Shown: in pieces, positions 13,854 through 37,575 of the stretch
How the letters are laid out: each line of letters begins with the position of its first letter
How positions within the stretch are numbered: position 1 is the first letter of the stretch
Assembly: GCA_002269645.1 (NCBI GenBank)
Contig: NIVC01000218.1
Span: forward strand, 13,231-77,230
Source of the DNA: Macrostomum lignano
Lineage: Eukaryota
Direction: 5' to 3'
Length of the DNA stretch: 64,000 nt
The notes under the pieces: model-generated
The model's input: only the letters and a program-made list of their open reading frames with translations
What the model was told of the DNA's origin: nothing
The model's database searches: none
Program-made: the position numbers and the translations under genes

Positions 13854-14238
13854 TCACTCCTGACCAGCCACCGGCGAGGTGCCGCGACCTCCGCAGTGCG
13901 GGCAGGTGCCGCTGCCGTCTTCAGCGACGGCGTAGGCAGCGGACTCGGCAATAGCAGCGGCGGCGGCGTCGGCGTCGTTAATCATGGCAGCCAGCAGGTC
14001 GGTCAGCTGCCGATTCTCCTCGGCCAGTTTGGCATTCTCTTCCAACGATTCGGACAGAGCCTGTCGGCGACTCTCGGCCAGTCTGGCCAGATATTCAGGC
14101 GAGTCCGGCTGCTCCTCGGCCGTCAGCCAGGCCAGCTCGGCGTCCGGCACACCGGTCTGGACGTTGGCATCAGTCAAAGCTGGCGGCAGCTCCGTCTGGG
14201 TGGCGGCTTCGCCGACGCGACGCCGATTCGAACGGCTG
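13854..14238 (-). CDS. GMNN: Geminin-like gene copy A, exon 2 (coiled coil)
   Basis: EEQPDSPEYLARLAESRRQALSESLEENAKLAEEN resembles the geminin [29 protein letters not shown] segment. tttctcag acceptor, GC-rich codon usage. The TGA overlaps a GTGAGT, so a further exon is possible. Confidence 0.72.
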
Positions 14239-14242
14239 CTGA

Positions 14243-15625
14243 GAAATGGGAGATTGAGTAGTTAGCCTACAGTGACTGGGTGCTAAGAATGGGAGATTGA
14301 GTAGTTAGCCTACAGTGACTGGGTGCTAAGAATGGGAGATTGAGTAGTTAGCCTACAGTGACTGGGTGCTAAGAAATGGGAGATTGGGTAGTTAGCCTAC
14401 AGTGACTGGGTGCTAAGAAATGGGAGATTGAGTAGTTAGCCTACAGTGACTGGATGCTAAGAATGGGAGATTGAGTAGTTAGCCTACAGTGACTGGGTGC
14501 TAAGAAATGGGAGATTGGGTAGTTAGCCTACAGTGACTGGGTGCTAAGAATATGAGATTGAGTAGTTAGCCTACAGTGACTGGGTGCTAAGAATGGGAGA
14601 TTGGGTAGTTAGCCTACAGTGACTGGGTGCTAAGAATGGGAGATTGGGTAGTTAGCCTACAGTGACTGGGTGCTAAGAAATGGGAGATTGGGTAGTTAGC
14701 CTACAGTGACTGGGTGCTAAGAATGGGAGATTGGGTAGTTAGCCTACAGTGACTGGGTGCTAAGAATGGGAGATTGGGTAGTTAGCCTACAGTGACTGGG
14801 TGCTAAGAAATGGGAGATTGAGTAGTTAGCCTACAGTGACTGGATGCTAAGAATGGGAGATTGAGTAGTTAGCCTACAGTGACTGGGTGCTAAGAAATGG
14901 GAGATTGGGTAGTTAGCCTACAGTGACTGGGTGCTAAGAAATGGGAGATTGAGTAGTTAGCCTACAGTGACTGGGTGCTAAGAAATGGGAGATTGGGTAG
15001 TTAGCCTACAGTGACTGGGTGCTAAGAATGGGAGATTGGGTAGTTAGCCTACAGTGACTGGGTGCTAAGAATGGGAGATTGGGTAGTTAGCCTACAGTGA
15101 CTGGGTGCTAAGAAATGGGAGATTGAGTAGTTAGCCTACAGTGACTGGATGCTAAGAATGGGAGATTGAGTAGTTAGCCTACAGTGACTGGGTGCTAAGA
15201 AATGGGAGATTGGGTAGTTAGCCTACAGTGACTGGGTGCTAAGAATATGAGATTGAGTAGTTAGCCTACAGTGACTGGGTGCTAAGAATGGGAGATTGAG
15301 TAGTTAGCCTACAGTGACTGGGTGCTAAGAAATGGGAGATTGGGTAGTTAGCCTACAGTGACTGGGTGCTAAGAATATGAGATTGAGTAGTTAGCCTACA
15401 GTGACTGGGTGCTAAGAATGGGAGATTGGGTAGTTAGCCTACAGTGACTGGGTGCTAAGAATGGGAGATTGGGTAGTTAGCCTACAGTGACTGGGTGCTA
15501 AGAAATGGGAGATTGGGTAGTTAGCCTACAGTGACTGGGTGCTAAGAATGGGAGATTGGGTAGTTAGCCTACAGTGACTGGGTGCTAAGAAATGGGAGAT
15601 TGAGTAGTTAGCCTACAGTGACTGG
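14243..15625. repeat. 43/44-bp minisatellite (about 32 copies)
   Basis: GAAATGGGAGATTGGGTAGTTAGCCTACAGTGACTGGGTGCTAA; fills most of the geminin-like intron. Confidence 0.95.
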
Positions 15626-15985
15626 CCGCTCTCAGACTACGTCTAACCTGAGCCAAGAAGTTCTATAAATGTTCAGATTTTCTAGAGTAGAAAAGTTAAG
15701 CAAAAATAGCCATAGTTAGCACCCAGGCAATAAGGGATCTTTTATATGGTATTTTATTGATCATAAATCGAGGATAGTCGTTAGAGTTTGCACAGTGGTA
15801 TCTTTAACTTTCAAACCATCAGACACTGCACATTTTTTCATACATAGGGATGGACCTAAAGACAGATTCTAGTACCAAGCAAAGATCCCAAGGATACCCG
15901 ATTTCTAATCTCTAATTGACAAAACCAAGCACCAATAATCCCATTGATATTGTATTTGAATTCATAAATCTGCATAGACACAGAC

Positions 15986-16116
15986 CTGCTAATAGTTGAT
16001 TTAGCATCAGCAAATGGCTTGAATGCTGTCTTCTTCCGCAGCACAGTTGGCTTCAGCGCTTCCATTCTCAGACTGTGAGCAATATTTTCTTGGCCCAGAT
16101 CAAACTTGGATGCCAT
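15986..16116 (-). CDS. GMNN: Geminin-like gene copy A, putative exon 1
   Basis: ATG at 16116, MASKFDLGQEN...RKKTAFKPFADAKSTIS. The AG/GTCTGT donor in phase 2 fits the exon 2 acceptor. Same peptide in copy B. The join is inferred. Confidence 0.5.
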
Positions 16117-17966
16117 TTGAATTTATTGGATCTGATAATCTGCAATGATTATTGGTTCATTAGGGGTAGATAATGGCAAGTTCATTTTACCAATTGAATG
16201 CATGATTATATTATCATAAATAGGTAATAGTTATAGCAACATTTTCAGTTAAAATCAAGCTGCCAAAATCAACTAGTAGGGGCCTAGCTTTAAAGATTGC
16301 ACATGAATGACTTCAATTATTAAAATAATAGAAAACACAAAGTAAAAAGTTCTAATCCAATAAAAAATATTAAAATGACTAATGACTAAGAACATGTTTA
16401 ATGTGAAAAAAACATTTGAATGTTTTTAATACTAAGTGGGGGTAAAAAACTACCTAGATTAAATTTTAAATTTAATGGCTTACCATAGCTTGTTCCTACT
16501 ATAACAATAACAATTAGACTTTTACTAATCCTTTTTCTTCTAAAAGTCAAACCCTATTAGATGGCAGATAAACTAGTTTTCTAGGCTTATTTTGCTTCTA
16601 TTTTATTTATATAACAGGTTCACAAATATCTTAACATTTCCTAAATTTTCTAACAGTTTTTTTAGATTTGATAGGCCTTCTATATTGGCAAAATTTGTTT
16701 TAGAATAGTTTTTTTTTAATAAGTTATATATTATTGAAATAGGTACTAGCTAATAGAAAAAAGCTTATAATATAATAGAATAAATATATATGTTTATTTG
16801 CTAAAATTTTCTACCATACACATGGGTAGCGGGAACTTATAGCACTGGGGGCATGTACCCCCAGAAAATGAATCAATGTGGTAATTTTTAATGCTTTTTC
16901 TGATTTTAGGCCCTAATTAACAGCTTATAAAGGTATATATACCCCCTTGCCCTGTGCCCGATGCTCCCCCCCTCCTTAAAATATTAGGCTCTACCACCCC
17001 TGAGCATACAGGCCACTTTCTTGATTATAATAGTAGAGAATTGAAGTACACTATTTCAACAAATGTGTATAATGTATTAGTAACCTAGGCCTTTGAAATA
17101 AATATATAAAAAGAGTTAAGAATCTTTTGAATTATCGAACAACCATTAGTAATGCCATAGGCCTATAGGATTTGTAATTGATAATTAGGCCCCCTAACAA
17201 TGTTTGCCACTTGAGCACTGAAACTATTAGGTATAAATTATATTGACAATTATATTAAGTTTAGTTAGTTTTACTTGGTAAATAGTTTAACAATAAAAAA
17301 AGAGATAATATAAAGAAGCAAAAGGATAATATTTTAGATAATAAAAAGCAGCTATTTTTTAGGGTTTTTAGATATGACATCAGAATTAGATTAATATTTA
17401 CTATGAATGATATTGATAAATCTTTATTAAAGTCTAAAAAGTTATTATTTAATAGCTTCATTTACTTTAAATAAGATACAATTTCATTTTACATTAAAGC
17501 CAGAAAAGGGGCTAAAAAGTGTATAGATAAAGCTAGGGCAGGGCCTATAGGCTATGCCTATGCCTATATTTTGCATAGTCTATTTGGCTATATAAGCCTA
17601 CTACATTATATCAGCCACATGTAGAAAGAAAAATATAATGTTCCATCTATATTACAATGGCACTGCCAGATCTATAGCCGTTAGAAAATGGGTTCTGGTG
17701 CCCCGGAACTCTAGCCATTGCCTATTCTACTATTGAATACTTCAATACTGTGAGCCGGCAATTGTCAAGTTCCATTTGTTAAATTTTTTGACTCAAGAAA
17801 AGTAATCTACAAACTATTTTAAGTAGGCCTACAAATAAATACTTTTAAGAGACATAAATAATTATGTCTCTTAAGCACTAAGCACTAATTCTAATCTAAA
17901 GTTGTCTTGTACTCTGTTTTTTAACTTGTGTCGATCGCGTGTGCTACATCCCAAAAATTCAGGTAG

Positions 17967-18228
17967 GAGGCTTTTCATATTACCAGTTCCAGAATCAGAA
18001 TCGGATCGGATCTTCCAAGAAAAACAGCAGTAAAACTATTTAATTCTGTTGAATGTTTGACTGCCTTAACAACCTCACTTAGCACAATTTTTCACTTTCT
18101 TCTTGGCGATTGTCATTCAATAATAAAAACTTTATAGCACGTATCTCCCTCTACTTATGGAGACAAAAAGTTATACTTCACATATTGGTTCTGGTTCTGG
18201 AACCAGAACAAGTAATATGAAAAGGCCT
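17967..18228. mobile_element. 262-bp MITE (3-bp TSD family), present only in copy A at this site
   Basis: Ends GAGGCTTTTCA / TGAAAAGGCCT, TSD TAG; empty site near 29964. Confidence 0.82.
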
Positions 18229-20434
18229 TAGGTTTTCAACCAACCTATTATACCGGCCGAGATCGATCTTGACGTGCGACAGTTAACATAATTTGAATTC
18301 GTCCCTCAATGCGTGTATGATTTGAATGTATCGCAAATGCAATTCTGATATTGTAATATAATCTTATTTTTATTTTACAGTCAAATTTCATGTGCTTATA
18401 TACATGCTATATTTTGATTCTTCCTAAATTTAGGATGACAGAAAATACATGTATGTCCATTTGAACTCACCGGCTTTGTAGAGCCCTCAATTAAGATTTA
18501 AGTATCAAGTAGAACTTAGCAGTGCTACGAAAACATTACTGATAAATAATATTACTGTACCTCGTGAGCTTTTTGCTTTTTGCAAAATACATGATGGATG
18601 GACTTTCATATGCATAAATGTATACTTATAAAGGTAGTACATGTATGACGTTGCATTCCTGCACGATAGCTCAAATGCATGTACAGCACGCACTAACTTT
18701 TGTTGCAATTTCCAATTAATTACACATGGTTGATGGCTGTGAATATACAATTCTACTTTTTACTGTTAAGAGTGCATCTAAATTAATTTTTAATTAGAGT
18801 AATTAATTCACAAATTTGTGCCGCGTGCGTTCATTTTTTTACAATAGTAACATGTACATGCATGCCGAGCTTTGAATTAAAATAATAGGAAAATCGCGAC
18901 TTGTGCAATAATCTATAGGCCATACAATAATAACACACGAACAGTTAAAATGAAAAGAAAAGTGTGTACGAACTTTGTTCACTTTAGTCACAAACAACGA
19001 ATAAAATTGCGCTATACACTGCGCACATAATACTGAACTGATGCGTGCTAGCATATATTTATATTTAAAATTCATTTTATAAAGAACAGGCAATAGAGAG
19101 TAAAGGGCTTTGATATATAATTTGAGATTGGGTCAGATAAGCACCCGTGGATTTAGGAAGATAAAATTGGCGACACATGCTTGGAAAACACAGTAAGCGG
19201 AGCAAAAGCTGCTGGTAATAAGTTTTAATAAATATTTAAACGAAAAAACACCCAGACAAACTAACTCAATGAGTACAATAGCTATTATTTTAACAATGAG
19301 AGGTATGAAGGGTGAGTTGAATTGATGCAGCAATCAGACAGCTAATCCTGTAACTCTTTGAATGAGAACGGGTAAAAATTGACAAGACGAAATAAAACAA
19401 AATCTGACGGAGAGGCGTGCAGCTGTTGCTAACAAGTCCGCGGCTGTTTGAAACCAAAACGGCAAGGGTTAAGTAAAACACGGGGGAGATTTTACAGAAA
19501 ACAGGGCATTCCGTGGACTGAGAGCGATACGATAACAAACTACTACCAGCTATAAGGAACAGTAGAGCTGCTTAACAAGAATGGAATGCAAAAATGTACA
19601 GAATATAAAATGAGATTAACGGCATATAAAATATGCATATTGGGAAGTAATAAAAATGAGAACACTAAAATGGTGTACCAATATGACGAGGCAAGCAAGG
19701 AGAAGCGCACCGAACACACAAGTCTAATGAGAAATCACAATTGAAACAATGACAAAAATAGTTGGAGCACAAAAACCTAATAAAAACTGGAATGTTGCCA
19801 TCGAAGCTGTGGGGTTTGGAGAATTTTGGGTGAGCAAAACAGCCAAATAGGTGTGGACAAAATAACCGGTAATATATATATAGCTCACAGGCTTGCTTGG
19901 TCTTCTCTCTATTAGAAGCAGCAACAGCAATTCGATACTAACAAGGCCAATTATTCTCTTTCAGCCAGTCCACCGGAAACTAAGAAAACATCAACTCTGA
20001 TAAGAGTTATCAACACAGCGCCCACCAGAGGCAAACTCAAACACCAGGAAAAATGAGATTACACATTAATTTGATGGGACTCGGCAAAAAACTATGAGAT
20101 TAAGACGAATTTTTGATGAGGACTTTGCGACTAGATGGAAATTTGCTCTGTTAGAGCAAAAACATTTGTTGGAATACATGTAGCCACAGATACTTAAATA
20201 GCTAGACATATCACTGAAATAAAAAATCTAATAAACTTTAATTGATTCAACGTTATTAAGCTGCAACAACCGCCGCTGGCTTTCTACAAGCAGACCCAAT
20301 AAATTAGCAACTTAATTCTGTTTGATTGTCCTGTGTGCATAGCGAGCAAGAGGGAAAAGGGCCCCAAGTCCCAGCCAGACCGATACACAGTTAGGTTTTC
20401 CTCCCTTTTGTCCGCTTGTCTGAATTTGATCTCT

Positions 20435-20660
20435 TTACTTTCTGCTCTCTCATTGGCTGAGCTAGATTTCCCTGCCCCCCTTAGCCTGAGTTTCGTCCGT
20501 CTAACTTTGACTTCTCTCTCCTTACTGCTCTCTCATTGGCTCAGCTAGATTTCCCTGCCCCCCCCTTAGGCTGAGTTTCGTCCGTCTAACTTTGACTCCT
20601 CTCTCCTTACTGCTCTCTCATTGGCTGAGCTAGATTGGGCCAGACTGAGTTTCGTCCGTC
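20435..20660. repeat. About 83-bp repeat x2.5 (paralog about 32440-32665)
   Basis: CTGCTCTCTCATTGGCTGAGCTAGATT recurs at about 20442, 20525 and 20610. Confidence 0.8.
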
Positions 20661-21337
20661 TTGCGTTCAATTGTTTATCAAGTTAAATGCTTTCTCTTTA
20701 TTCTTAACCCTATATGCTCCTGGGGCCTCAACCCTGAGGAAGGAAAGAAAATTTAGCTGCTACATTAAATTTAAGTAGCATGCGCAGACATATTACTGAA
20801 AAAAGAGTAGACGCTCTGCTTTTCATAACTTCAATTTCTAGTGGCATAGGAAGCTATTCTAGTATCTGTGTATGTAGCTAGGCTTTTCTCAGACAGATTC
20901 GATTGTTTCTTTAGACATCTCTTAATAAAGCGGCTAATGTATTGAGAAAGACTAAAAACTGACTTAAAAAGTTGACAAAAATGTAACAATTAAAGGAGCA
21001 AATAATAAAGGAGATCGCGCGTGTTTTTTAGTTAATTGTTTAGAAACATTCTGACAATCATTAAAGCAGATCAGTTGAGACAAAATAAATTAAATTGGAT
21101 GATTTTATTGCTAAGTTGAAAGGCAATATTTAGGAAAGCTTATTAATTGCAGTTCATAAAAAAGGTATAGAGCGATTTTTTGAGTTGTTTAAGGGGCGTT
21201 TCTTGGAATAGCTTAAGGCCTAAGGGCTACTTTTACAGTAGTTTAAGGAGTCTCTTGGAATAGCTTAATGACGATTCTTATACTTACTGAACAAGGAGAA
21301 TTTTTAGTTAGGCAACCTGTGGGCTGATTTTTGGAGC

Positions 21338-22040
21338 TCACAGCGTCGACTTTGCCGACTCTTTGTTACCGCCGCCGCGTCGGCCGGCGCTTTCGCTGCG
21401 CGCCTTCCGCCGACGGAACAGCCAAGATCCGGACAGCCGCTTCCGCCAGCTTTGCTGACCGGACTTGCCAGCTGCTTGCATCTGGTGAAGACCGCCGCCA
21501 GTCACGGAGCGAACGCTGCCAGTGACGGAGCCGCCGCCAGCATTGGCGGATTCGTCCTGCTGTTGTTGCGGAGGCCGCGGCGTCTCCAGCGGGCTGACAA
21601 CCCACAGACGGAGTGCCGATCTGCTCTCCCGGATTAGACGGCTCAGGTGCTCGTGCGATGCCCATTTCACATCCTGGTCGCCGACTCCGATGACTACATC
21701 ACGCGGCTCCAGGCCGTTCGCCTTCGCCTGGCCGCTGTCGTCTACTGAGGCCACGGTCACTGGAGCCTCGCCGGCCAGGCTGAACCCGAAGCTGCCGCTG
21801 CCGCCGCCGTCGCCTTCGCCGCGATGTAGCCGAATTTCCCGCGGCTGCGACCAGGCGTTGCGCGAATTGAAAAACCCGATTGGGCCCAGCGCGGTGAACA
21901 GGTCCTGCACCGGGTGGCGGTGGAAGTTCGGCTCATCTGGCGACAGGGCGCGGCCGATGCGGGCCCGGATGCCGCTGGAGTAGAATGAGACCAGCTGGGC
22001 GCTGGGCTCCAGCTCGATGTCCATGTGCAGCGTGCGGGCT
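21338..22040 (-). CDS. RHPN: Duplicated (orphan) rhophilin terminal exon encoding the PDZ domain; expression unknown
   Basis: Copy of 33339-34041 with intact ccgccag acceptor and stop. I see only two synonymous differences (21491, about 21563). Confidence 0.6.
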
Positions 22041-22104
22041 CTGGCGGGCAGGGGTAGGTGAAACAAGTGTTTATAATAATAATAAATATTCGCAAGAGAG
22101 CTGC

Positions 22105-22318
22105 AAGCATCCTGGAGCAATGCCTTCGACGACATCGTCCCACAACCAGCGCTGAGGCAATTCTGCCCATTTCGCTGACTCCTGAGCACGTGCCAGCGCG
22201 CCAGTACTGTACGCAGGCACGCACTCACACACACGCTCACACAGGGTGTACAGCGGCCCTGACTTTCTAATCGTCACGCATGTACACTCTCTGTGCCCGC
22301 TAAGCTGCTCTGCCCCCT
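22105..22318 (-). mobile_element. SINE family A, internally deleted (no B box)
   Basis: A-box head jumps directly to the body; 3' end lies just upstream of the PDZ exon acceptor. Confidence 0.72.
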
Positions 22319-22529
22319 GAAAGGATGCCTTCTGCAAACACGAAAGTTTGAAGCTCGAAACCTCACAAGCATGAAACATCACATCGTCGAAAACAAAAAA
22401 TTGAAGCTTGTAGTTTTACAAAACTGCTTGGAAGTTTCGTGCTTGTAGAAATGATTGACAAGACTTTTCGACGATAGGAAATTTGGAGCATGCGAAAGTG
22501 ACTCGGCGAAATAATTTTATTGATGAGCA

Positions 22530-23742
22530 GTTGAGGATCTGGGAGGGTGCAGGCGGTGGCCTGGCAACTGAGGATCTGGGAGGCTGGCTCAGCAACTGAG
22601 GATCTGAGAGGCTGGCTCAGCACCTGAGGATCTGAGAGGCTGGCTCAGCACCTGAGGATCTGAGAGGCTGGCTCAGCACCTGAGGATCTGGGAGGCTGGC
22701 TCAGCAACTGAGGATCTGAGAGGCTGGCTCAGCACCTGAGGATCTGGGAGGCTGGCTCAGCAACTGAGGATCTGAGAGGCTGGCTCAGCACCTGAGGATC
22801 TGGGAGGCTGGCCCAGCAACTGAGGATCTGAGAGGCTGGCTCAGCAACTGAGGATCTGAGATGCTGGCTCAGCAACTGAGGATCTGGGAAGCTGGCTCAG
22901 CAACTGAGGATCTGTGTGGCTGGCCAGGAACTGAGGATCTGAGAGCCTGGCTCAGCATCTGAGGATCTGAGAGCCTGGCTCAGCACCTGAGGATCTGAGA
23001 GCCTGGCTCAGCATCTGAGGATCTGAGAGCCTGGCTCAGCAACTGAGGATCTGAGAGCCTGGCTCAGCAACTGAGGATCTGAGAGCCTGGCTCAGCAACT
23101 GAGGATCTGAGAGCCTGGCTCAGCAACAGAGGATCTGAGAGCCTGGCTCAGCAACTGAGGATCTGAGAGCCTGGCTCAGCATCTGAGGATCTGAGAGCCT
23201 GGCTCAGCAACTGAGGATCTGAGATGCTGGCTCAGCAACTGAGGATCTGGGAAGCTGGCTCAGCAACTGAGGATCTGTGTGGCTGGCCAGGAACTGAGGA
23301 TCTGAGAGCCTGGCTCAGCATCTGAGGATCTGAGAGCCTGGCTCAGCACCTGAGGATCTGAGAGCCTGGCTCAGCATCTGAGGATCTGGGAGGCTGGCTC
23401 AGCAACTGAGGATCTGAGAGCCTGGCTCAGCAACTGAGGATCTGAGAGCCTGGCTCAGCAACTGAGGATCTGAGAGCCTGGCTCAGCAACTGAGGATCTG
23501 AGAGCCTGGCTCAGCAACTGAGGATCTGAGAGCCTGGCTCAGCATCTGAGGATCTGAGAGCCTGGCTCAGCACCTGAGGATCTGAGATGCTGGCTCAGCA
23601 ACTGAGGATCTGGGAGGCTGGCTCAGCAACTGAGGATCTGGGAGGCTGGCTCAGCAACAGAGGATCTGAGAGCCTGGCTCAGCAACAGAGGATCTGAGAG
23701 CCTGGCTCAGCATCTGAGGATCTGAGAGCCTGGCTCAGCAAC
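22530..23742. repeat. 28-bp minisatellite CTCAGCAACTGAGGATCTGAGAGCCTGG
   Basis: About 43 copies; ends at the duplication junction. Confidence 0.95.
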
Positions 23743-25639
23743 ATTAGGGAGTAATATATAGTATATATATAGTATATAGTATATAGTATATAGTATATAC
23801 TAATATATAGTATATATAGGGAGTAAAGAAGGTTATAAAGTGCAGTGCAGCGAACGGCGGAAGGCGATTCTTTTATTATTCCGTCCAATAGGGAGTAGCA
23901 GTCTTTAACTTGAAAAGATTTTCGCTTTGTATAAAAATCGATAAATTCCCAGCTATAGAATACTGGATAGCGCTAGACTTGGACATGTGAATAAACAATA
24001 AACAACAATTGAAAAAGAGAGAATTGAGAGGCTTTTTCAGGCGTTTGGCACCTGCCGAGCCTCTGCGCTAAAATTGGTCGGGAAGGGGACGGAGTTGAGC
24101 AGACACGTCAGTAAAACTGAGCCATTTTGAGCTGCTGCTGCTGTATTTAAGTAAGGCCTTGGCTATGCGGCACTGGGACTGGCCCGGCCATGCACTGCTC
24201 CCGCGGGTCTCACCAGTTGGGACCAATTGGGACCCGACCTCCCAAGCCCCTGCCAGCCAGCCAGACTGTTCCGCGCTCCATGGTCCCGCAATTAGCAATT
24301 GAAAATTGGCGACTCAATTTTGCTCGGATAAATCAAAGGGGGCAGGCGAGCTCGGGGGCTGGCGCGCGTAGGGCTTTGAGCATTCTCATGCTCGAACTCT
24401 ATGATGCACGATTGCACTGGCACTGCCAGTAGATGAACTTGAAACGGACCAGTTCAAGAGCATCAAATATGGCTATATATTTAACTTTTATATCAATACG
24501 AAAGTTACGGAAATCAGCCTGTGCTGATGGCCAGCCGTCATCATGCCATCAAGGACCACTGTAGTAGAAGGACTCTGCACTGCTGCTTTGTCTTCACCTG
24601 AAATATTTAATGTAATTGCCTACTGAGAACTCCAAACGCATCACAGAAGAAAGCAACGGGCAGAAAATTGAGCAGTTGTGACACAAACTTATACACTATA
24701 CAAAAAACATTAGCCGCGAGTGCAGACTCCTACTACAGTGGTCCATGCATATCCGCAGCAACTTCCACCCCGAAACCAGTACTTTTCTCAGGTCTCAGCT
24801 CAAAGTGACGCAATTCACGTGTCTCAACAGTGGGTGATGTAATTTGCGTCACAGAGGCCCCAGCTTAGGCTGGTGAGGATCCAGAGTGGAAAGTCATGGC
24901 TTCAGTTGGATTAAAACTGCCACTTGTTGTCCACTGGCTGGTTTCAGGGTGGAAACTTTACCATGTCGCTGATCTATTTAAAAAAACTACATCCAATCGC
25001 GTCAGATCGCAAACTTGGGTTACAAAGTACTCATGTAGGAATTTATTCATGCAGAATTCTTGGCTTTGTCCCCCCACCATCAGACTGCATGCCAAGCCTG
25101 CTCTTCTTTGTCTCTTTTCAGCTTCAGGTTTGTCTCTTCTCAGCTCTCTTAATTAGCTCCTCTTTTCTCCCCTCTCCTCTCTTCTCCTTTATTCCCTCCC
25201 CTCTCCTTTCTCCTATCTCTCTTCTCTATTCACTCTCCTCTCTCCCCTCTGGCCCGCAGTAATGCGTTAGGTTCTCTACCTGGCCATTGAGGTAAAAGTT
25301 TTCCGATCTCTGAAGTAGAGGATTTCAAAGCAGGTTTACTCAACAACATTAAAAAGTCGCCACCTTTGACAGTGCGCAGTAAATTCCAGCTCAGTATTGA
25401 CTTTTGAGTGACGCAACTTGCGCCACGCGACGCAGAGCTGGGCTGGGTGAGGAGGGATTGGGAAGAGCGGAGGGCGAAGACTGGATAGATTGAAGCTTCC
25501 GCCCGGTTTTCATTGTTTTTTTTCTAGCATTTTTAAAAATCAAAATGGTTGGCCAGGTGATAAACACTGGTTGCAAAAAACATTGCTCACTGGGGCAAAG
25601 ACTGCGACTTTTCAATGTTGCTGAGTATATTCTGACCAC

Positions 25640-26012
25640 AGGGGCGCCGTAATCTAGCGGTCTAGCGCGGCGCTCTGATGTCAGATGTGACATGGTCGAG
25701 GCTCGATTCCAAGTGCAGTCACATTAATTCGGGGCTAAATTGGAATCTCGGATTGGCTCTGCTTGTGCAATTAACCGCTCAGCTTGAGGGCCAACCCCCA
25801 AGGCACAGTGAAGTGTACATGCCTAACGATAAATAAAGTTAGGGCCGCTGTACACTCCTGTGTGTGTGTGCCTGTGCGTATGACTGCGTACGTATCCGCG
25901 CGCTTGTGTGCCTGCTTAGGGGAGTCAGCGGAATGGGCAGCAATGCCTCTCGTCGGTTGTGTGAAAATGTCGCTTAAAGTGCGCCATCTGGGTGCACACA
26001 GCCCCTGCCTCT
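25640..26012 (+). mobile_element. SINE family A (duplicate of 12616-12975)
   Basis: Same head and body. Confidence 0.75.
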
Positions 26013-26880
26013 GATGAAAAATTTTTGACCGCAGAACTTCATTTCTACACTTGGTGCTGATTTTTAAAGAAATTATTATCCACTGCGATTGCCTTTACTA
26101 GCTATCGTCGAATGCAGTTCTATAGCTAGTGGATGGGGGCTCTAGACTAGACTAAAAGGTTCCCTTAACGAATTTATGCTCATCTGAGTTTCAAATTAGC
26201 CGCATGTCGTGTACCAATTTTAATTGACCCTTAATACGAGTACTAACCGCCAAAATACATGTACAGTCAAAGCCGTGCTCAGACATATAAATCAATAATA
26301 AAAAATAAGCTACCAAATAGTTTACAATTATGTATAAAACACGCGATAAGCTGATTGCGAACAATAACGAATGCTGTTTTTATTAGAGTTGCAACTTATG
26401 AAATGTTTAGCAATAAAAAGCTGACAGGAAGTCATGCCTAAGCACCAGTTGAAAAGTACAGTCACACACAATAGACAGCGGGCCACAGCATATTAGCTAA
26501 ATGTGATGATATTTTAGATACAATAACAAAATAGATTGAAAAACTGGAAATGCTAGCTTGTTAAAAAAGTATTGAAATAATTACTTTATCATTGCTGCTA
26601 AATGCAAGCACAGCAAATAATGCGACACACCAATAAAACGAAGGTAACATTGTTTTACAAAAATAGAATGAATATATAAGAGACCAAATCGAGAACAATG
26701 ATTGCACAAACACAGGAGAAATGGCATTATTTAGCTAGCTAATAAAAATGTAGGACAAAAAAGTCGCGACAACACTCAAAAGCTACTATAAGTAGACAAG
26801 TAGCAGTTTACACGATATACTGATTAAAAATACAAAAATAAGTGATTGGTGAAGATCAGTGACCAGCGATCGGATTCCAC

Positions 26881-27265
26881 TCACTCCTGACCAGCCACCG
26901 GCGAGGTGCCGCGACCTCCGCAGTGCGGGCAGGTGCCGCTGCCGTCTTTAGCGGCGGCGTAGGCAGCGGACTCGGCAATAGCAGCGGCGGCGGCGTCGGC
27001 GTCGTTAATCATGGCGGCCAGCAGGTCGGTCAGCTGCCGATTCTCCTCGGCCAGTTTGGCATTCTCTTCCAACGATTCGGACAGAGCCTGTCGGCGACTC
27101 TCGGCCAGTCTGGCCAGATATTCAGGCGAGTCCGGCTGCTCCTCGGCCGTCAGCCAGGCCAGCTCGGCGTCCGGCACACCGGTCTGGACGTTGGCATCAG
27201 TCAAAGCTGGCGGCAGCTCCGTCTGGGTGGCGGCTTCGCCGACGCGACGCCGATTCGAACGGCTG
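26881..27265 (-). CDS. GMNN: Geminin-like gene copy B, exon 2
   Basis: Intact paralogous exon; differs from copy A at YAAAKDG vs YAVAEDG plus a synonymous change. Confidence 0.72.
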
Positions 27266-27268
27266 CTG

Positions 27269-27790
27269 AGAAATGGGAGATTGGATAGTTAGCCTACAGT
27301 GACTGGGTGCTAAGAAATGGGAGATTGGGTAGTTAGCCTACAGTGACTGGGTGCTAAGAAATGGGAGATTGGGTAGTTAGCCTACAGTGACTGGGTGCTA
27401 AGAAATGGGAGATTGGGTAGTTAGCCTACAGTGACTGGGTGCTAAGAAATGGGAGATTGGGTAGTTAGCCTACAGTGACTGGGTGCTAAGAAATGGGAGA
27501 TTGGGTAGTTAGTCTACAGTGACTGGGTGCTAAGAAATGGGAGATTGGGTAGTTAGCCTACAGTGACTGGGTGCTAAGAAATGGGAGATTGGGTAGTTAG
27601 CCTACAGTGACTGGGTGCTAAGAAATGGGAGATTGGGTAGTTAGCCTACAGTGACTGGGTGCTAAGAAATGGGAGATTGGGTAGTTAGCCTACAGTGACT
27701 GGGTGCTAAGAAATGGGAGATTGGGTAGTTAGCCTACAGTGACTGGCCGCTGAGAAATGGGAGATTGGGTAGTTAGCCTACAGTGACTGG
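27269..27790. repeat. 44-bp minisatellite (about 12 copies), copy B
   Basis: Same unit, shorter and more homogeneous. Confidence 0.95.
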
Positions 27791-28151
27791 CCGCTCTCCA
27801 ACTACGTCTAACCTGAGCCAAGAAGTTCTATAAATGTTCAGATTTTCTAGAGTAGAAAAGTTAAGCAAAAATAGCCATAGTTAGCACCCAGGCAATAAGG
27901 GATCTTTTATATGGTATTTTATTGATCATAAATCGAGGATAGTCGTTAGAGTTTGCACAGTGGTATCCTTAACTTTCAAACCTTCAGACACTGCACATTT
28001 TTTCATACATAGGGATTGACCTAAAGAAAGATTCTAGTTCCCAAGCAAAGATCCCAAGGATACCCGATTTCTAATCTCTAATTGACAAAACCAAGCACCA
28101 ATAATCCCATTGATATTGTATTTGAATTCATAAATCTGCATAGACACAGAC

Positions 28152-28282
28152 CTGCTAATAGTTGATTTAGCATCAGCAAATGGCTTGAATGCTGTCTTCT
28201 TCCGCAGCACAGTTGGCTTCAGCGCTTCCATTCTCAGACTGTGAGCAATATTTTCTTGGCCCAGATCAAACTTGGATGCCAT
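28152..28282 (-). CDS. GMNN: Geminin-like gene copy B, putative exon 1
   Basis: Same 43-codon peptide and donor as copy A. Confidence 0.5.
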
Positions 28283-31200
28283 TTGAATTTATTGGATCTG
28301 ATAATCATGAATGATTATTGGTTCATTAGGGGTAGATAATGGCAAGTTCATTTTACCAATTGAATGCATGATTATATTATCATAAATAGGTAATAGTTAT
28401 AGCAACATTTTCAGTCAAAATCAAGCTGCCAAAATCAACTAGTAGGGGCCTAGCTTTAAAGATTGCACATGAATGACTTCAATTATTAAAATAATTGAAA
28501 ACCCAATTAAAAAGTTCTAATCCAATAAAAAATATTAAAATGACTAATGACTAAGAACATGTTTAATGTGAAAAAACATTTGAATGTTTTTAATACTAAG
28601 TGGGGGTAAAAAACTACCCAGATTAAATTTTAAATTTAATGGCTTACCATAGCTTGCTCCCACTATAACAATAACAATTAGTCTTTTACTAACCCTTTTT
28701 TCTTCTAAAAGTCAAACCCTATCAGCTGGCAAATAAACTAGTTTTCTAGGCTTATTTTGTTTCTATTTTATTTATATAATAGGTTTACAAATATCTCAAC
28801 ATTTCCTAAATTTTATTTTCTATAACAGTTTTTTTAGATTTGATAGGTTCCCTATATTGGCAAAATTTGTTTTAGTATAGGCCCTAGTTTTTATTATTAT
28901 TAAGTTATATATTATTGAAATAGGTTTTGGCCAATAGGAAAATGCTTATAATATAATGGAATAAATATATTTGTTTATTTGCTAGAATTTTCTAGCATGC
29001 GCATGGATGGCAGGAGCTTGTGGCACTGGGGGCATGTGCCCCCCAGAAATTGAATCAATGTAGTAATTTTAGTGCTTTTTCTGATTTTAGGCCCTAATTA
29101 GCAGCTTATAAAGGTACCTGTGCCCCCCTTGCCTTGTGCCCGATGCCCTCCCCATCCCCTAAAATATTAGCCATTAGGCTCTACCACCCCTGAGCATGCA
29201 GGCCACTTTCTTGATTAGGCCTATAATAGTTAATAGTAGAGAATTGAAGTACACTATTTCAACAAATGTGTAATGTATTAGTAGCCTAGGCCTTGGAAAT
29301 AAATATATAAAAAGAGTTAAGAATCTTTTGAATTATTAAACAACCATTAGTAATGCCATAGGCCTTAAGCAGCGCAGCACTGCATTTGAGAATAGGCCTA
29401 TGGCTATATAGGTATAAGAGCAGTGGACAATGTGCATGATGTAGTGATTCTTCAACAATCAGTGGTAAATAAAATATTAGGCCTAGCTAGGCTAATTAAG
29501 ATTTTGAACATAATAATGTATGAGCATATCTAAATGTTTTAGCATGCACATTTTATAAAAAAAACTTGGCAAAAAGGCAACAACGCCAACAAGCTTAATG
29601 AAATATAATGTCCACTCCATCACGCTTAGGCAATGCCACTCCTATTCTGCTATTGAATACTTCAATACTGTGAGCCGGCAATTGTCAAGTTCCATTCGTT
29701 AAATTATTTTGACTCAAGAAAAGTAATTTACAAACTATTTTAAGTACAAATAAATACTTTTAAGAGACATAAATAATTAGGCCCTATGACATAGTCAGGA
29801 ATGACTATGCCCTATGACATAGCCTATGTCTCTTAAAATAGTTATTTAAGAGACATAAATAATTATGTCTCTTAAGCACTAAGCACTAATTCTAATCTCA
29901 AGTTGTCTTGTACTCTGTTTTTAACTTGTGTCGATCGCGTGTGCTACGTCCCAAAAATTCAGGTAGGTTGTTAAGTCCAACCAACCTATATACGGCCGAG
30001 TGAGAGAGATCGATCTGACGTGCGACATTTAACATAATTTGAATTCGTCCCTCAATGCGTGTATGATTTGAATGCATCGCAAATGCAATTCTGATATTGT
30101 AATATAATCTTATTTTACAGTCAAATTTTATGTGCTTATACTAGTATACATGCTATATTTTGATTCTTCCTAAATTTAGGATGACAGAAAATACATGTAT
30201 GTCCATTTGAACTCACCGGCTTTGTAGAGCCCTCAATTAAGATTTAAGTATCAAGTAGAACTTAGCAGTGCTACGAAAACATTACTGATAAATAATATTA
30301 CTGTACCTTGAGCTTTTTGCAAAATACATGATGGATGGAGCTTTCGTATACATAAATGTTTACTTATAGAAGGTAGTACATGTATGACGTTGCATTCCTG
30401 CACGATAGCTCAAATGCATGTACAGCACGCACTAACTTTTGTTGCAGTTTCCAATTAATAACACATGGTTGCTTGCTGTGAATATACAATTCTACTTTTT
30501 ACTGTTAAGAGTGCATCTAAATTAATTTTTAATTAGTGTAATTAATTCACAAATTTGTGCCGCGTGCGTTCATTTTTTACAATAGTAACATGTACATGCA
30601 TGCCGGGCATTGGCTTAAAATAATAGGAAAATCGCGACTTGTGCAATAATCTATAGGCCATACAATAATAACACACGAACAGTTAAAATGAAAAGAAAAG
30701 TGTGTACGAACTTTGTTCTTTTTAGTCACAAACAACGAATAAAATTGCGCTATACACTGCGCACATAATACTGAACTGATGCGTGCTAGCATATATTTAT
30801 ATTTAAAATTCATTTTATAAAGAACAGGCAATAGAGTAAAGGGCTTTGATATATAATTTGAGATTGGGTCAGATAAGCACCCGTGGATTTAGGAAGATAA
30901 AATTGGCGACACATGCTTGGAAAACACAGTAAGCGAAGCAAAAGCCGTTGGTAATAAGTTTTAATAAATATTTAAACAAAAAAACACCCAGACAAACTAA
31001 CTCAATGAGTACAATAGCTATTATTTTAACAACGAGAGGTATGAAGGGTGAGTTGGATTGATGCAGCAAGCAGACAGCTAATCCGGTAACTCTGAATGAG
31101 AACGGGTAAAAATTGACAAGACGAAATAAAACAAAATCTGACGGAGATGCGTGCAGGTGTTGCTAACAAGTCCGCGGCTGTTTGAAACCAAAACGGCAAG

Positions 31201-32122
31201 GGTTAAGTAAAACACGGGGGAGATTTTACAGAAAACAGGGCATTCCGTGGACTGAGAGCGATACGATAACAAACTACTACCAGCTATAAGGAACAGTAGA
31301 GCTGCTTAACAAGAATGGAATGCAAAAATGTACAGAATATAAATTGAGATTAACGGCATATAAAATATGCACATTGGGAAGTAATAAAAATGAGAACACC
31401 AAACTGGTGTACCAATATGACGAGGCAAGCAAGGAGAAGCGCACCGAACACACAAGTCTAATGAGAAATCACAATTGAAACAATGACAAAAATAGTTGGA
31501 GCACAAAAAACCTAATAAAAACTGGAATGTTGCCATCGAAGCTGTGGGGTTTGGAGAATTTTTGGTGAGCAAAACAGCCAAATAGGTGTGGACAAAATAA
31601 CCGGTAATATATATATATATAGCTCACAGGCTTGCTTGGTCTTCTCTCTATTAGAAGCAGCAACAGCAATTCGATACTAAAAAGGCCAATTATTCTCTTT
31701 CAGCCAGTCCACCGGAAACTAAGAAAACATCAACTCTGATAAGAGTTATCAACACAGCGCCCACCAGAGGCAAACTCAAACACCAGGAAAAATGAGATTA
31801 CACATTAAATTGATGGGACTCGGCAAAAAACTATGAGATTAAGACGAATTTTTGATGAGGACTTTGCGACTAGATGGAAATTTGCTCTGTTAGAGCAAAA
31901 ACATTTGTTGGAATACATGTAGCCACAGATACTTAAATAGCTAGACATGTCACTGAAATAAAAAATCTAATAAACTTTAATTGATTCAACGTTTTTAAGC
32001 TGCAACAACCGCCGCTGGCTTTCTACAAGCAGACCCAATAAATTAGCAACTTAATTCTGTTTGATTGTCCTGTGTGCATAGCGAGCAAGAGGGAAAAGGG
32101 CCCCAAGTCCCAGCCAGACCGA

Positions 32123-32384
32123 GAGGCTCTTCACGGCAATCGATTCCAGAACCAGAATCGGTTCGGATTTCCAAGAAAAAAAGCAGTATAACTTTTTAAC
32201 TTTGTTGAATGTTTGACTGCCTTAACAGCCTCACTTTGCACAATTTTTCACTTTCTTCTTGGCTATTGCCATCCAATAATCAAAATTTTAAAGCACTAAT
32301 ATCTCTCTAGTTTAGGAGACAAAAAGTTATACTTTACAAATTGGTTCTGGTTCTAGAACCAGAACAAGCAATATGAAGAGCCTC
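32123..32384. mobile_element. 262-bp MITE (same family), present only in copy B at this site
   Basis: TIR GAGGCTCTTCA / TGAAGAGCCTC, TSD CGA; empty site near 20380. Confidence 0.87.
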
Positions 32385-33338
32385 CGATACACAGTTAGGT
32401 TTTCCTCCCTTTTGTCCGCTTGTCTGAATTTGATCTCTTTACTTTCTGCTCTCTCATTGGCTGAGCTAGATTTCCCTGCCCCCCTTAGGCTGAGTTTCGT
32501 CCGTCTAACTTTGACTTCTCTCTCCTTACTGCTCTCTCATTGGCTGAGCTAGATTTTCCTGCCCCCCTTAGGCTGAGTTTCGTCCGTCTAACTTTGACTT
32601 CTCTCTCCTTACTGCTCTCTCATTGGCTGAGCTAGATTGGGCCAGACTGAGTTTCGTCCGTCTTGCGTTCACTTGTATATCAAGTTAAATGCTTTCTCTT
32701 CATTCTTAACCCTATATGCTCCTGGGGCCACAACCCCGAGGAAGGAAAGAAAATTTAGCTGCTACATTAAATTTAAGTAGCATGCGCAGACATATTACTG
32801 AAAAAAGAGTAGACGCTCTGCTTTTCATAACTTCAATTTCTAGTGGCATAGGAAGCTATTCTAGTATCTGTGTATGTAGCTAGGCTTTTCTCAGACAGAT
32901 TCGATTGTTTCTTTAGACATCTCTTAATAAAGCGGCTAATGTATTGAGAAAGACTAAACACTGACTTAAAAAGTTGACATAAATGTAACAATTAAAGGAG
33001 CAAATAATAAAGGAGATCGCGCGCGTTTTTTAGTTAATTGTTTAGAAACATTATGACAATCATTAAAACAGTTAAGTTGAAACAAAATAAACTAAATTGG
33101 ATGATTTTATTGCTAAGTTGAAAGGCAATATTTAGGAAAGCTTATTAATTGCAGTCAATAAAAAAGGTATAGAGCGATTTTTGAGTTGTTTAAGGGGCGT
33201 TTCTTGGAATAGCTTAAGGCCTAAGGGCTACTTTTACAGTAGTTTAAGGAGTCTCTTGGAATAGCTTAATGACGATTCTTATACTTACTGAACAAGGAGA
33301 ATTTTTATTTAGGCAACCTGTGGGCTGATTTTTGGAGC

Positions 33339-34041: not shown

Positions 34042-34105
34042 CTGGCGGGCAGGGGTAGGTGAAACAAGTGTTTATAATAATAATAAATATTCCCAAGAGA
34101 GCTGC

Positions 34106-34319
34106 AAGCATCCTGGAGCAATGCCTTCGACGACATCGTCCCACAACCAGCGCTGAGGCAATTCTGCCCATTCCGCTGACTCCTGAGCACATGCCAGCGC
34201 GCCAGTACTGTACGCAGGCACGCACTCATACACACGCTCACACAGGGTGTACAGCGGCCCTGACTTTCTAATCGTCAGGCATGTGCACCCTTGGTGCCCG
34301 CTAAGCTGCTCTGCCCCCT
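34106..34319 (-). mobile_element. SINE family A, internally deleted (duplicate)
   Basis: As 22105-22318. Confidence 0.72.
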
Positions 34320-37505: not shown

Positions 37506-37575
37506 TTTGGGGAGTAATAAAAAGGTGGGGTGATAAAAATGCATTTCTAAGAAAACGACTTATTCAAGCACTCAC

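What the first reader, a model, noticed from the sequence alone, without database searches (positions are those of the whole stretch)
21338..24500. Duplication places the eag upstream region in front of an intact orphan rhophilin PDZ exon: possible new chimeric PDZ-only gene
Seen: copy B starts with a duplicate of the region from about 220 bp upstream of the eag ATG, without the ATG exon. In the transcribed direction it now leads through the 28-bp satellite into an exon with an intact acceptor (22040) and an in-frame ATG at 22024, giving a 228-aa ORF holding the whole PDZ domain. The 703-nt exon differs from its parent at only two synonymous sites by my reading, while flanks carry many substitutions and indels. 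Inference: it may be expressed as a PDZ-only protein under eag regulatory sequence, or as an alternative last exon giving rhophilin the same protein with a different 3' UTR.
Basis: partly seen in the sequence, partly recalled or inferred. Interest (0 to 1): 0.72.

Follow-up and report, generated by a model that had tools for sequence, protein, structure and literature searches.

The report
Spare rhophilin PDZ exon from tandem duplication
A young 11-13 kb tandem duplication left an intact spare copy of the last (PDZ-domain) exon of the rhophilin gene behind a spare copy of the eag potassium-channel gene's upstream region; this is the usual raw material for a new chimeric gene, but nothing available here shows that it is switched on.

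Summary
All genes lie on the minus strand. The order is rhophilin (HR1, BRO1, PDZ exons), a small geminin-like gene, then eag. A tandem duplication (copy A 10742-23742, copy B 23815-34945) runs from a 28-bp satellite in rhophilin's last intron to 217 nt upstream of the eag ATG. The spare exon (22040-21338) keeps the parent's acceptor, a 228-aa ORF holding the PDZ domain, and an AATAAA signal 229 nt after the stop. It differs from the parent exon at two synonymous sites. Non-exon sequence differs at 1.85%.

The layout is that of a chimeric gene born by tandem duplication. The only strict Inr with a TATA-like box in the eag flank lies inside the duplicated part.

No expression data could be reached. 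Divergence along the unit is patchy. The exon's identity rests on one 528-nt identical run, about what I recall for a gene-conversion tract.

My ranking:
- Untranscribed or non-functional by-product kept identical by youth and conversion: about 0.5.
- Transcribed chimeric eag-5'/PDZ unit: about 0.27.
- Assembly artefact: about 0.1.
- Alternative rhophilin last exon: about 0.05.

It is a new member of a known kind, of modest interest.

The parts
10447..10544 (-). eag ATG exon (ATG at 10525-10523, donor AGC|GTAAGT after 10447). A possible acceptor ...tatcacgttag| lies before 10544. This exon is outside the duplication.
   Evidence: Sequence read. Donor score, acceptor. Downstream eag exons carry Pfam Ion_trans and have eag/KCNH5 homologues.
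10742..23742 (.). Copy A of the tandem duplication, about 13.0 kb. It runs from 217 nt upstream of the eag ATG to the end of the 28-bp satellite.
10742..13349 (-). eag 5' flank, copy A, lying between the geminin-like poly(A) signal and the breakpoint. It holds TATAAAAG at 10745-10738 (cut by the breakpoint), TATAAAAG at 11423-11416, Inr TCAGTT at 11055-11050 with TTAAATA at 11084-11078, and donor candidates ending at 11145 and 11529.
   Evidence: The block 10949-11453 has 1 substitution and one 4-nt indel.
13854..16116 (-). Geminin-like gene, copy A. Exon 1 is 16116-15986, the intron is a 43-bp satellite, exon 2 is 14238-13854, and AATAAA lies at 13355-13350.
   Evidence: Pfam Geminin scores 23.3 bits against a cut-off of 22.2.
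21104..21109 (-). Poly(A) signal AATAAA 229 nt downstream of the orphan exon's stop codon. It is conserved at 33106-33111 in copy B.
21338..22040 (-). Orphan copy of rhophilin's terminal PDZ exon. The acceptor lies before 22040, the in-frame ATG is at 22024, and the stop is at 21340-21338. The ORF is 228 aa.
22041..22563 (-). Retained 3' part of rhophilin's last intron. It includes a copy of a dispersed repeat at 22117-22277 and a copy-A-only GTGAGT at 22228-22223.
22564..23742 (.). 28-bp satellite with 42 units in copy A. The distal units are a GAGAGCC variant that copy B lacks.
23743..23817 (.). Duplication junction: att, then AGGGAGTAA, a 63-nt TA-rich stretch, and AGGGAGTAA again at 23818-23826. 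This sequence is not present at either outer boundary.
   Evidence: There is no N in the window.
23815..34945 (.). Copy B of the tandem duplication, about 11.1 kb.
23815..26379 (-). Duplicated eag 5' flank, copy B. It lies directly upstream of the junction and the orphan exon in the transcribed direction. Inr A+1 is at 24118, TATAAAAG at 24492-24485, and donor candidates end at 24214 and 24598.
26881..28282 (-). Geminin-like gene, copy B. It is complete and differs from copy A by V/A, E/K and one synonymous site.
33339..34041 (-). Parent terminal PDZ exon of rhophilin, the first acceptor met after the donor at 35230.
34542..34945 (.). 28-bp satellite with 14 units in rhophilin's last intron. 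The right-hand breakpoint lies in it or at its end.
35230..35350 (-). Rhophilin penultimate exon with donor TAA|GTAAGT. It leaves 2 nt of a codon, which matches the phase of both PDZ exon copies.
37550..39632 (-). Upstream rhophilin exons with the HR1 and BRO1 domains.
   Evidence: Pfam HR1 7.8e-10 and BRO1. BRO1 3.9e-23. Reading frames.

Best explanation
This is a real, young tandem segmental duplication. The unit is about 11-13 kb and the copies differ by about 1.9% at substitutions. One breakpoint lies in the 28-bp satellite of rhophilin's last intron. The other lies 217 nt upstream of the eag start codon. Each copy therefore carries rhophilin's terminal PDZ exon with its 3' end, a whole geminin-like gene and about 2.6 kb of eag 5' flank.

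Rhophilin keeps using the first exon copy it meets (B, 34041-33339). eag keeps using the flank next to its ATG exon (A). The second exon copy (A, 22040-21338) and the second flank copy (B) are left over, side by side at the junction.

My most likely reading is that this leftover pair is a by-product and not yet a working gene. The spare exon is intact because the duplication is recent and because a patch of about 0.5 kb covering most of the exon has been kept or made identical. Non-allelic gene conversion between the tandem copies is the most probable cause of that patch.

Shown: the duplication, its boundaries, and the intact acceptor, ORF and poly(A) signal. Inferred: absence of function, and conversion as the cause of the identity.
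For: Structure.

The duplication is real, not stacked haplotypes:
- The window has no N.
- The junction joins the satellite to the unit's first bases through a TA-rich stretch bracketed by AGGGAGTAA. That sequence exists at neither outer boundary.
- False duplications are typically separated by assembly gaps or by unsupported sequence (PMC9516828).

Patchy divergence:
- The index of dispersion of substitutions in non-exon windows is 1.9-2.9 (p = 0.002-0.007).
- The longest perfectly identical runs are 528 nt (21564-22091: 477 nt of exon plus 51 nt of intron), 367 nt (geminin-like 3' UTR) and 272 nt (eag flank).
- With random placement of differences, P(longest run of 528 or more) = 0.0013 and P(second-longest of 367 or more) = 0.002.
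- These lengths are close to the few-hundred-base conversion tracts reported in Drosophila (my own knowledge).

Selection alone is a poor fit. Even with both exon copies fully constrained, the chance that the run carries no synonymous or intronic change is only 0.04. The remaining 3' 226 nt of the exon carries 2 substitutions, not far below the flank rate.

Obstacles to expression as a protein:
- 2.08 kb separate the only strict Inr (24118) from the ORF's ATG, and 1.2 kb of that is satellite.
- That stretch holds 17 ATG triplets.
- The start context cacATGg is weak.
- No good 5' splice site lies downstream of that Inr within the duplicated flank.
Against: There are no nonsynonymous changes in 519 sites. 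The expectation is 9.6 if both copies drifted (P = 6e-5) and 4.8 if only the orphan drifted (P = 0.008). The exon is the least diverged 703-nt stretch of the whole unit.

The three identical patches coincide with sequences that look functional: the coding exon plus acceptor, a 3' UTR, and the putative eag promoter or first exon. Selection predicts that coincidence. Randomly placed conversion tracts do not. The third label was given after seeing the conservation, so it counts for less.

High GC content does not explain the low divergence. Other GC-rich windows (11500-11751, 12677-12928) carry 10 substitutions per 250 nt.
Confidence: 0.5

Rival explanations
1. A chimeric transcription unit. The duplicated eag 5' flank (copy B) still fires. 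Its transcript runs across the junction and the satellite, or is spliced from a duplicated eag 5' non-coding exon. It then uses the orphan acceptor at 22040 and ends at the AATAAA at 21109-21104. The first reading frame of any length is the 228-aa PDZ-only ORF, so a free rhophilin PDZ module would be made wherever eag regulatory DNA is active, presumably in neurons. A weaker version is that the unit is transcribed but the protein is made poorly or has no function.
For: Orientation and order are right.

This is the standard route to chimeric genes. [quoted passage not shown]

Promoter elements survive in copy B:
- The only strict Inr in the 2.8-kb flank (TCAGTT with TTAAATA at -31) is duplicated unchanged at 24118.
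- A consensus TATAAAAG lies at 24492.
- The breakpoint TATA is replaced by TATATATA.

Splicing is plausible:
- Two 5' splice-site candidates are conserved in both copies: CTG|GTGAGA (last exon base 11145 in A, 24214 in B) and CAG|GTGAAG (11529 in A, 24598 in B). They score as well as the proven donors in this window.
- eag's ATG exon is preceded by a plausible acceptor. eag may therefore have an upstream non-coding exon whose duplicated donor would find 22040 as its best next acceptor (pyrimidine fraction 0.8).
- The satellite units are already skipped in the native rhophilin intron.

The exon shows 0 of 519 nonsynonymous and 2 of 180 synonymous differences. The flank block 10949-11453 has 1 substitution in 504 nt. 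A derived change found only in copy A creates GTGAGT 188 nt upstream of the acceptor.
Against: - No transcript evidence is available. The eag TSS is unknown, and a perfect TATAAAAG sits on the breakpoint, which would put a TSS in the unduplicated 217 nt.
- If transcription starts at 24118, the leader is about 2 kb with 17 ATGs, and the start context is poor.
- If the donor at 24214 follows the upstream ATG at the copy-B equivalent of 11213, the junction reads TG|A. That is a stop codon, so no fusion protein forms and the ORF would need reinitiation (read).
- The conservation signal is matched by the conversion model.
Confidence: 0.27
2. An assembly artefact, that is, a false 'heterotype' duplication. 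Copies A and B would be the two haplotypes of a single-copy locus laid end to end. The exon's synonymous-only differences would be ordinary allelic polymorphism.
For: - The pattern looks like alleles of a constrained locus: neutral-level divergence of about 1.9% with indels and satellite length differences, plus strong conservation of the exon, a UTR and the promoter-like block.
- The join lies between a satellite and a TA-rich low-complexity stretch. This is the kind of place where assemblies go wrong, and false duplications are sometimes joined by unsupported sequence (PMC9516828).
Against: - There is no gap.
- The junction sequence (satellite, att, AGGGAGTAA, TA-rich stretch, AGGGAGTAA, unit) is novel and in register with the unit's first bases. 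It must come from reads, and a single-copy locus has no such adjacency.
- The copy-A satellite carries a derived sub-variant array (GAGAGCC units) next to the junction.
- One boundary is not in a repeat.
Confidence: 0.1
3. An alternative last exon of rhophilin. Some rhophilin transcripts skip the proximal exon and its poly(A) site. They run on for about 12 kb and splice from 35230 to 22040. The protein is the same but the 3' UTR is different.
For: Phase and acceptor are identical to the parent's. The 3' UTRs differ at several sites.
Against: - The proximal acceptor is identical in strength and is transcribed first.
- An AATAAA follows the parent stop by 229 nt.
- The path crosses a complete geminin-like gene with its own poly(A) signal, and then the eag flank.
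- An identical protein gives no reason for constraint on the coding sequence.
Confidence: 0.05

Closest known systems
Chimeric genes formed by tandem duplications that cut across two genes. The class is surveyed in Drosophila yakuba by Rogers et al. 2017 (PMC5460883). Sdic and Quetzalcoatl in D. melanogaster are named from my own knowledge.
   Same: A tandem duplication has one breakpoint in or next to each of two same-strand neighbours. The junction places the 5' region of the downstream gene (eag) in front of the 3' exon of the upstream gene (rhophilin). Both parent genes stay intact.
   Different: The 5' partner contributes only flank, possibly with 5' UTR, and no coding exon. The product would therefore be an N-terminally truncated rhophilin (PDZ only), not a fusion protein. 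Transcription across the junction is not shown here, whereas the published cases are defined by expression.
Rhophilin (Rhp, RHPN1/2): a Rho-GTP-binding scaffold with HR1, BRO1 and C-terminal PDZ domains.
   Same: The parent gene in the window has HR1, BRO1 and PDZ in that order. The PDZ matches solved rhophilin-2 PDZ structures. The orphan exon encodes exactly the parent's last 233 codons.
   Different: The orphan ORF lacks the HR1 and BRO1 domains. It could bind PDZ ligands but could not respond to Rho. That could make it a competitor of the full-length protein (inference).
Non-allelic (interlocus) gene conversion between young tandem duplicates in Drosophila (my own knowledge of the literature; not retrieved here).
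   Same: Patches of a few hundred identical bases sit in a background of about 2% divergence. The substitution counts are over-dispersed.
   Different: With only two sequences and no outgroup, conversion cannot be shown directly. The patches coincide with functional-looking elements, which selection would also produce.
False heterotype duplications in genome assemblies (Ko et al. 2022, PMC9516828).
   Same: The two adjacent copies differ at a level comparable with heterozygosity, and the functional elements are conserved.
   Different: There is no assembly gap, and the junction is specific and novel. Read depth could not be tested.

Membership tests
Rhophilin terminal exon (paralogous copy) | Encodes a PDZ domain of rhophilin type | tested here: met
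   Pfam PDZ E = 2.6e-8, residues 75-141. PDB hits include rhophilin-2 PDZ 1vae and 2vsv over residues 55-149. Other PDZ proteins (RGS12, RGS3) score slightly higher, so the assignment to rhophilin rests on the identity to the parent exon and on the gene context.
Rhophilin terminal exon (paralogous copy) | Parent gene has HR1 and BRO1 exons upstream on the same strand, with a phase-compatible splice junction | tested here: met
   HR1 7.8e-10. BRO1 3.9e-23. The donor at 35230 leaves 2 nt and both exon copies start with the third codon base.
Chimeric gene born by tandem duplication | Tandem duplication with breakpoints in or next to two different same-strand genes, both parents left intact | tested here: met
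   The breakpoints lie in rhophilin's last intron (at or before 34945) and 217 nt upstream of the eag ATG (10742).
Chimeric gene born by tandem duplication | The 5' partner's promoter and TSS lie inside the duplicated segment | tested here: inconclusive
   Inr plus a TATA-like box at 11053/24118 and TATAAAAG at 11423/24492 are duplicated. Another TATAAAAG is cut by the breakpoint. These are motif matches only. No TSS data are available.
Chimeric gene born by tandem duplication | A transcript crosses the junction and includes the 3' partner's exon | not testable with these tools
   No RNA data are available. Exact-protein look-ups found nothing.
Chimeric gene born by tandem duplication | Open reading frame in the 3' partner's exon | tested here: met
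   228-aa ORF from the ATG at 22024.
False (heterotype) assembly duplication | Assembly gap or unsupported filler between the copies | tested here: not met
   The window has no N, and the junction is a specific sequence in register with the unit start. Whether reads support it could not be tested.
False (heterotype) assembly duplication | Half read depth and haplotype-specific k-mers over both copies | not testable with these tools
   No reads are available.
Retrocopy or processed pseudogene of rhophilin | Intron-less copy with a poly(A) tail, away from the parent's flanks | tested here: not met
   The copy keeps 523 nt of the intron, the satellite and 10 kb of collinear downstream DNA.
eag (KCNH1/5-type) channel gene as the downstream neighbour | eag-type N-terminus and ion-transport domain | tested here: met
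   N-terminal exon read. Pfam Ion_trans. Best named homologues are eag/KCNH5 at 77% identity.

The most novel reading that the evidence does not exclude
The duplication has already produced a working new gene. The copy of the eag promoter and first non-coding exon would drive a two-exon mRNA that splices into the orphan exon. That mRNA would encode a free rhophilin PDZ module in eag-expressing neurons. Purifying selection would be holding both halves: 0 of 519 nonsynonymous changes in the exon, and 1 substitution in the 504-nt promoter block. By a rough clock, the gene would be less than about 1 Myr old.
Probability: 0.12. Interest if true: 0.6.

Novelty: new member of a known kind. Interest (0 to 1): 0.3.

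Why it matters
If the junction is transcribed, this would be a cleanly dated, very young example of domain release. A single tandem duplication would have turned the last exon of a multi-domain Rho effector into a stand-alone PDZ protein under the control of a neuronal ion-channel gene. Both parents and all breakpoints are still readable. Such cases help to measure how often exon shuffling by tandem duplication yields functional genes, as opposed to debris.

If it is not transcribed, the locus is an ordinary young segmental duplication. Its main practical value is then as a warning for annotation. It creates an extra rhophilin-like PDZ gene model and a second geminin-like gene. Short reads will also map ambiguously here.

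Tried and rejected
- Protein database search with the 300-aa ORF found no hit.
- A search with a conserved eag exon found only fragmentary hits at 87% identity or less, and no close relative. The organism could not be named and no orthologous locus could be fetched.
- Exact-sequence look-ups of the 300-, 265- and 228-aa ORFs in public assemblies found nothing, so there was no independent assembly or transcript contig.
- Rfam and tRNA scans of the window found nothing. The tRNA-like look of the dispersed repeat is therefore unconfirmed.
- The single-sequence AlphaFold model of the 228-aa ORF had mean pLDDT 37.8 and is uninformative. The strand and helix order is PDZ-like, but I do not rely on it.
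- A literature search for the eag TSS or promoter returned nothing usable.
- GC content as the cause of the exon's low divergence was rejected, because other GC-rich windows are among the most diverged.
- A uniform-rate model for the flanks was rejected, because the flanks are over-dispersed. I therefore give the negative-binomial P of 0.004 alongside 2e-4.
- A retrocopy origin was rejected, because the intron and flanks are retained.
- The apparent second 'segmental duplication' at 59346-64000 is just a 40-bp satellite array.
- The 5' splice-site matrix uses frequencies I wrote from memory, so I used it only for ranking against the proven donors in the window.


Full report
**What is in the window.**
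- All genes relevant to the finding lie on the minus strand.
- eag. Its exons occupy 1285-5579 (Pfam Ion_trans). The best named homologues are eag/KCNH5.
  - The start-codon exon has its ATG at 10525, encodes [26 protein letters not shown], and ends with a GTAAGT donor after 10447.
- Rhophilin. Its exons run from 39632 down to 33339.
  - They include an HR1/BRO1 exon, BRO1 exons and a 121-nt penultimate exon (35350-35230, donor TAA|GTAAGT).
  - A 1.2-kb last intron holds 14 units of a 28-bp satellite. The 703-nt terminal exon (34041-33339) encodes the PDZ domain.
- Geminin-like gene. Between rhophilin and eag lies a two-exon gene of 171 codons (Pfam Geminin 23.3 bits against a cut-off of 22.2). 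Its intron is a 43-bp satellite.
- I could not name the organism. The databases reachable here hold no close relative. The gene content is insect-like.

**The observation.**
- A tandem duplication is present. Copy A is 10742-23742 and copy B is 23815-34945. They are collinear except for four differences:
  - satellite copy number (43-bp array 32 versus 12 units; 28-bp array 42 versus 14 units);
  - a 260-bp repeat inserted in copy B;
  - an AT-rich stretch that aligns poorly;
  - about 45 small indels.
- Substitution divergence in well-aligned non-exon columns is 142 of 7,671, or 1.85%.
- The left end of homology is 10742, 217 nt upstream of the eag ATG. It falls inside a consensus TATAAAAG at 10745-10738.
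- The right end lies in or at the end of the 28-bp satellite.
- The junction (23743-23817) reads: satellite, att, AGGGAGTAA, a 63-nt TA-rich stretch, then AGGGAGTAA continuing into the unit.
- In the direction of transcription, the order is therefore:
  1. rhophilin;
  2. PDZ exon B;
  3. geminin-like B;
  4. eag flank B;
  5. the junction and satellite;
  6. PDZ exon A;
  7. geminin-like A;
  8. eag flank A;
  9. eag.
  - Exon A (22040-21338) has the parent's acceptor, identical for 51 nt into the intron.
  - An in-frame ATG at 22024 gives a 228-aa ORF with the whole PDZ domain.
  - There are only two differences from the parent, both third-position and synonymous: 21491 GGT/GGC and 21563 CAA/CAG.
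- I add that both copies keep an AATAAA 229 nt after the stop. The orphan is therefore a complete terminal exon.

**Is the exon's conservation more than chance?**
- Under a uniform rate, the chance of 2 or fewer substitutions in 703 columns is 2e-4.
- There are no nonsynonymous differences in 519 sites. The expectation is 9.6 if both copies drifted (P = 6e-5) and 4.8 if only the orphan drifted (P = 0.008). Synonymous divergence (2 of 180 sites) is close to the flank rate.
- No 703-column window elsewhere in the unit has 2 or fewer substitutions.
- The flanks are not uniform, however.
  - The index of dispersion is 1.9-2.9 (p = 0.002-0.007). With a negative binomial the exon's P rises to 0.004.
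  - The signal comes from one perfectly identical run of 528 nt (21564-22091: 477 nt of exon plus 51 nt of intron). This is the longest run in the duplication.
  - It is followed by runs of 367 nt in the geminin-like 3' UTR and 272 nt in the eag flank.
  - With random placement of differences, P(longest run of 528 or more) = 0.0013 and P(second-longest of 367 or more) = 0.002.
  - The 3' 226 nt of the exon carries both substitutions and is not clearly below the background rate.
- Even if both exon copies were fully constrained, the chance that the 528-nt run shows no synonymous or intronic change is only 0.04. If only the parent were constrained, it is 0.0015.
- A gene-conversion tract of ordinary length would explain the run directly (my own knowledge of Drosophila tract lengths).
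- Selection and conversion therefore fit the data about equally well. With two sequences and no outgroup, I cannot separate them.
- High GC content is not the explanation.

**Could the junction be a gene?**
- The layout is the textbook one for chimeric genes made by tandem duplications that cut across gene boundaries. In D. yakuba lines, 76 such structures were found and 24 showed raised expression of the duplicated segment (PMC5460883).
- Whether it works here depends on where eag transcription starts, and that is unknown.
- Motif scanning of the 2.8-kb flank gave the following:

| Element | Copy A | Copy B | Note |
|---|---|---|---|
| Strict Inr TCAGTT with TTAAATA at -31 to -25 | A+1 at 11053 | A+1 at 24118 | The only strict Inr in the flank; duplicated unchanged |
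| Consensus TATAAAAG | 11423 | 24492 | Duplicated |
| Consensus TATAAAAG on the breakpoint | 10745-10738 | replaced by TATATATA | Would place a TSS in the unduplicated 217 nt |
| 5' splice-site candidate CTG\|GTGAGA | last exon base 11145 | 24214 | Scores as well as proven donors in the window |
| 5' splice-site candidate CAG\|GTGAAG | last exon base 11529 | 24598 | Scores as well as proven donors in the window |

- The eag ATG exon is preceded by a plausible acceptor before 10544.
- Scenario 1: eag has an upstream non-coding exon ending at 11145. Its copy at 24214 has lost its normal acceptor, and the best next acceptor downstream is 22040 (pyrimidine fraction 0.8). The satellite units are already ignored in rhophilin's native intron.
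- Scenario 2: the TSS is at 24118. The leader to the ORF is then 2.08 kb with a 1.2-kb satellite and 17 ATG triplets, and the start context cacATGg is poor.
- Scenario 3: the TSS follows the TATA box on the breakpoint. Only the upstream elements are then duplicated.
- The block 10949-11453, which holds these elements, has one substitution and one 4-nt indel in 504 nt.

**The alternative-last-exon idea.** This is unlikely.
- The parent acceptor is identical and is met first.
- It is followed by its own poly(A) signal.
- A complete gene with a further poly(A) signal lies in between.

**Artefact?**
- The pattern of neutral-level divergence with conserved functional elements is also what two alleles of one locus would show. 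False heterotype duplications are common in assemblies of heterozygous genomes (PMC9516828).
- Against this, there is no gap.
- The junction is a specific, novel sequence in register with the first bases of the unit, and the adjoining satellite has a derived sub-variant. A single-copy locus contains no such adjacency.
- I put the artefact at about 0.1. Only read mapping can settle it.

**Verdict.**
- My ranking:

| Reading | Probability |
|---|---|
| By-product of a real, young duplication, kept intact by youth and a conversion (or constraint) patch | about 0.5 |
| Transcribed chimeric eag-5'/PDZ unit | about 0.27 (about 0.12 for a selected, functional PDZ-only gene) |
| Assembly artefact | about 0.1 |
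| Alternative rhophilin last exon | about 0.05 |

- A rough age, if the organism has fly-like neutral rates (my own knowledge; inference only), is a few hundred thousand to just under one million years.
- This is a new member of a known kind, of modest interest until transcript data are examined.

Noticed in passing
window 13854-16116 (copy A) and 26881-28282 (copy B), minus strand: A complete two-exon geminin-like gene of 171 codons (Pfam Geminin 23.3 bits, just above the cut-off) lies inside the duplicated unit, so there are two whole copies. They differ by V/A, E/K and one synonymous site in exon 2. Exon 1 is identical, and so are 367 nt of the 3' UTR.
   Followed up: partly
window 14237-15625 versus 27264-27790: The single intron of the geminin-like gene consists almost wholly of a 43/44-bp satellite, with 32 units in copy A and 12 in copy B. 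The acceptor of exon 2 lies in the last satellite unit.
   Followed up: partly
window 10738-10745 and 23800-23826: The left breakpoint falls inside a consensus TATAAAAG 213 nt upstream of the eag ATG. In copy B the same position reads CTATATATAC. The junction's TA-rich stretch is bracketed by a 9-nt direct repeat, AGGGAGTAA.
   Followed up: partly
window 22223-22229, minus strand: A derived A-to-G change found only in copy A (at 22228) turns ATGAGT into GTGAGT, a consensus 5' splice site 188 nt upstream of the orphan acceptor. Copy B and two other copies of the same dispersed repeat have A there. This could be chance, as it is one of about 10 substitutions in the intron remnant.
   Followed up: partly
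window 10545-10643, minus strand: A 32-codon upstream ORF (MPQLPFDVADKTAC...) ends 20 nt before the eag ATG, at the TAG of the putative acceptor.
   Followed up: no
window 2316-2440, 6164-6291, 12772-12942, 22117-22300, 25802-25972, 34118-34301, 40917-41078, 45503-45740, 52855-53364, 54050-54139: A dispersed repeat family of 160-300 bp has at least 9 copies at 77-93% identity in both orientations. One copy sits 77-237 nt upstream of the PDZ acceptor in both duplicates. Part of it looks tRNA-like by eye, but ARAGORN and Rfam found nothing.
   Followed up: partly
whole window, e.g. 8073-8523, 9595-10416, 36105-37506, 47452-48114, 49033-49549, 50712-51338, 54946-55578, 56624-58717, 59346-64000: The density of tandem arrays with 16-151-bp units is unusual, with at least 14 arrays, many of them inside introns. 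They include 20-bp x41 in eag intron 1, 29/59-bp in a rhophilin intron, 16-bp x131 and 40-bp x117. The right-hand 8 kb has strong negative GC skew.
   Followed up: no
window 44829-45302, minus strand: An exon encodes the C-terminal lobe of an M16 (insulinase/pitrilysin-type) peptidase (Pfam PqqF-like_C_4 1.9e-16, Peptidase_M16_C 8.5e-6). It probably belongs to a neighbouring gene upstream of rhophilin.
   Followed up: partly
window 19704-20453: Another low-divergence stretch between the copies has 5 substitutions in 750 nt. It is AT-rich sequence about 0.9-1.6 kb downstream of the PDZ stop codon. It may be a distal 3' UTR, a regulatory block, or a further conversion patch.
   Followed up: no
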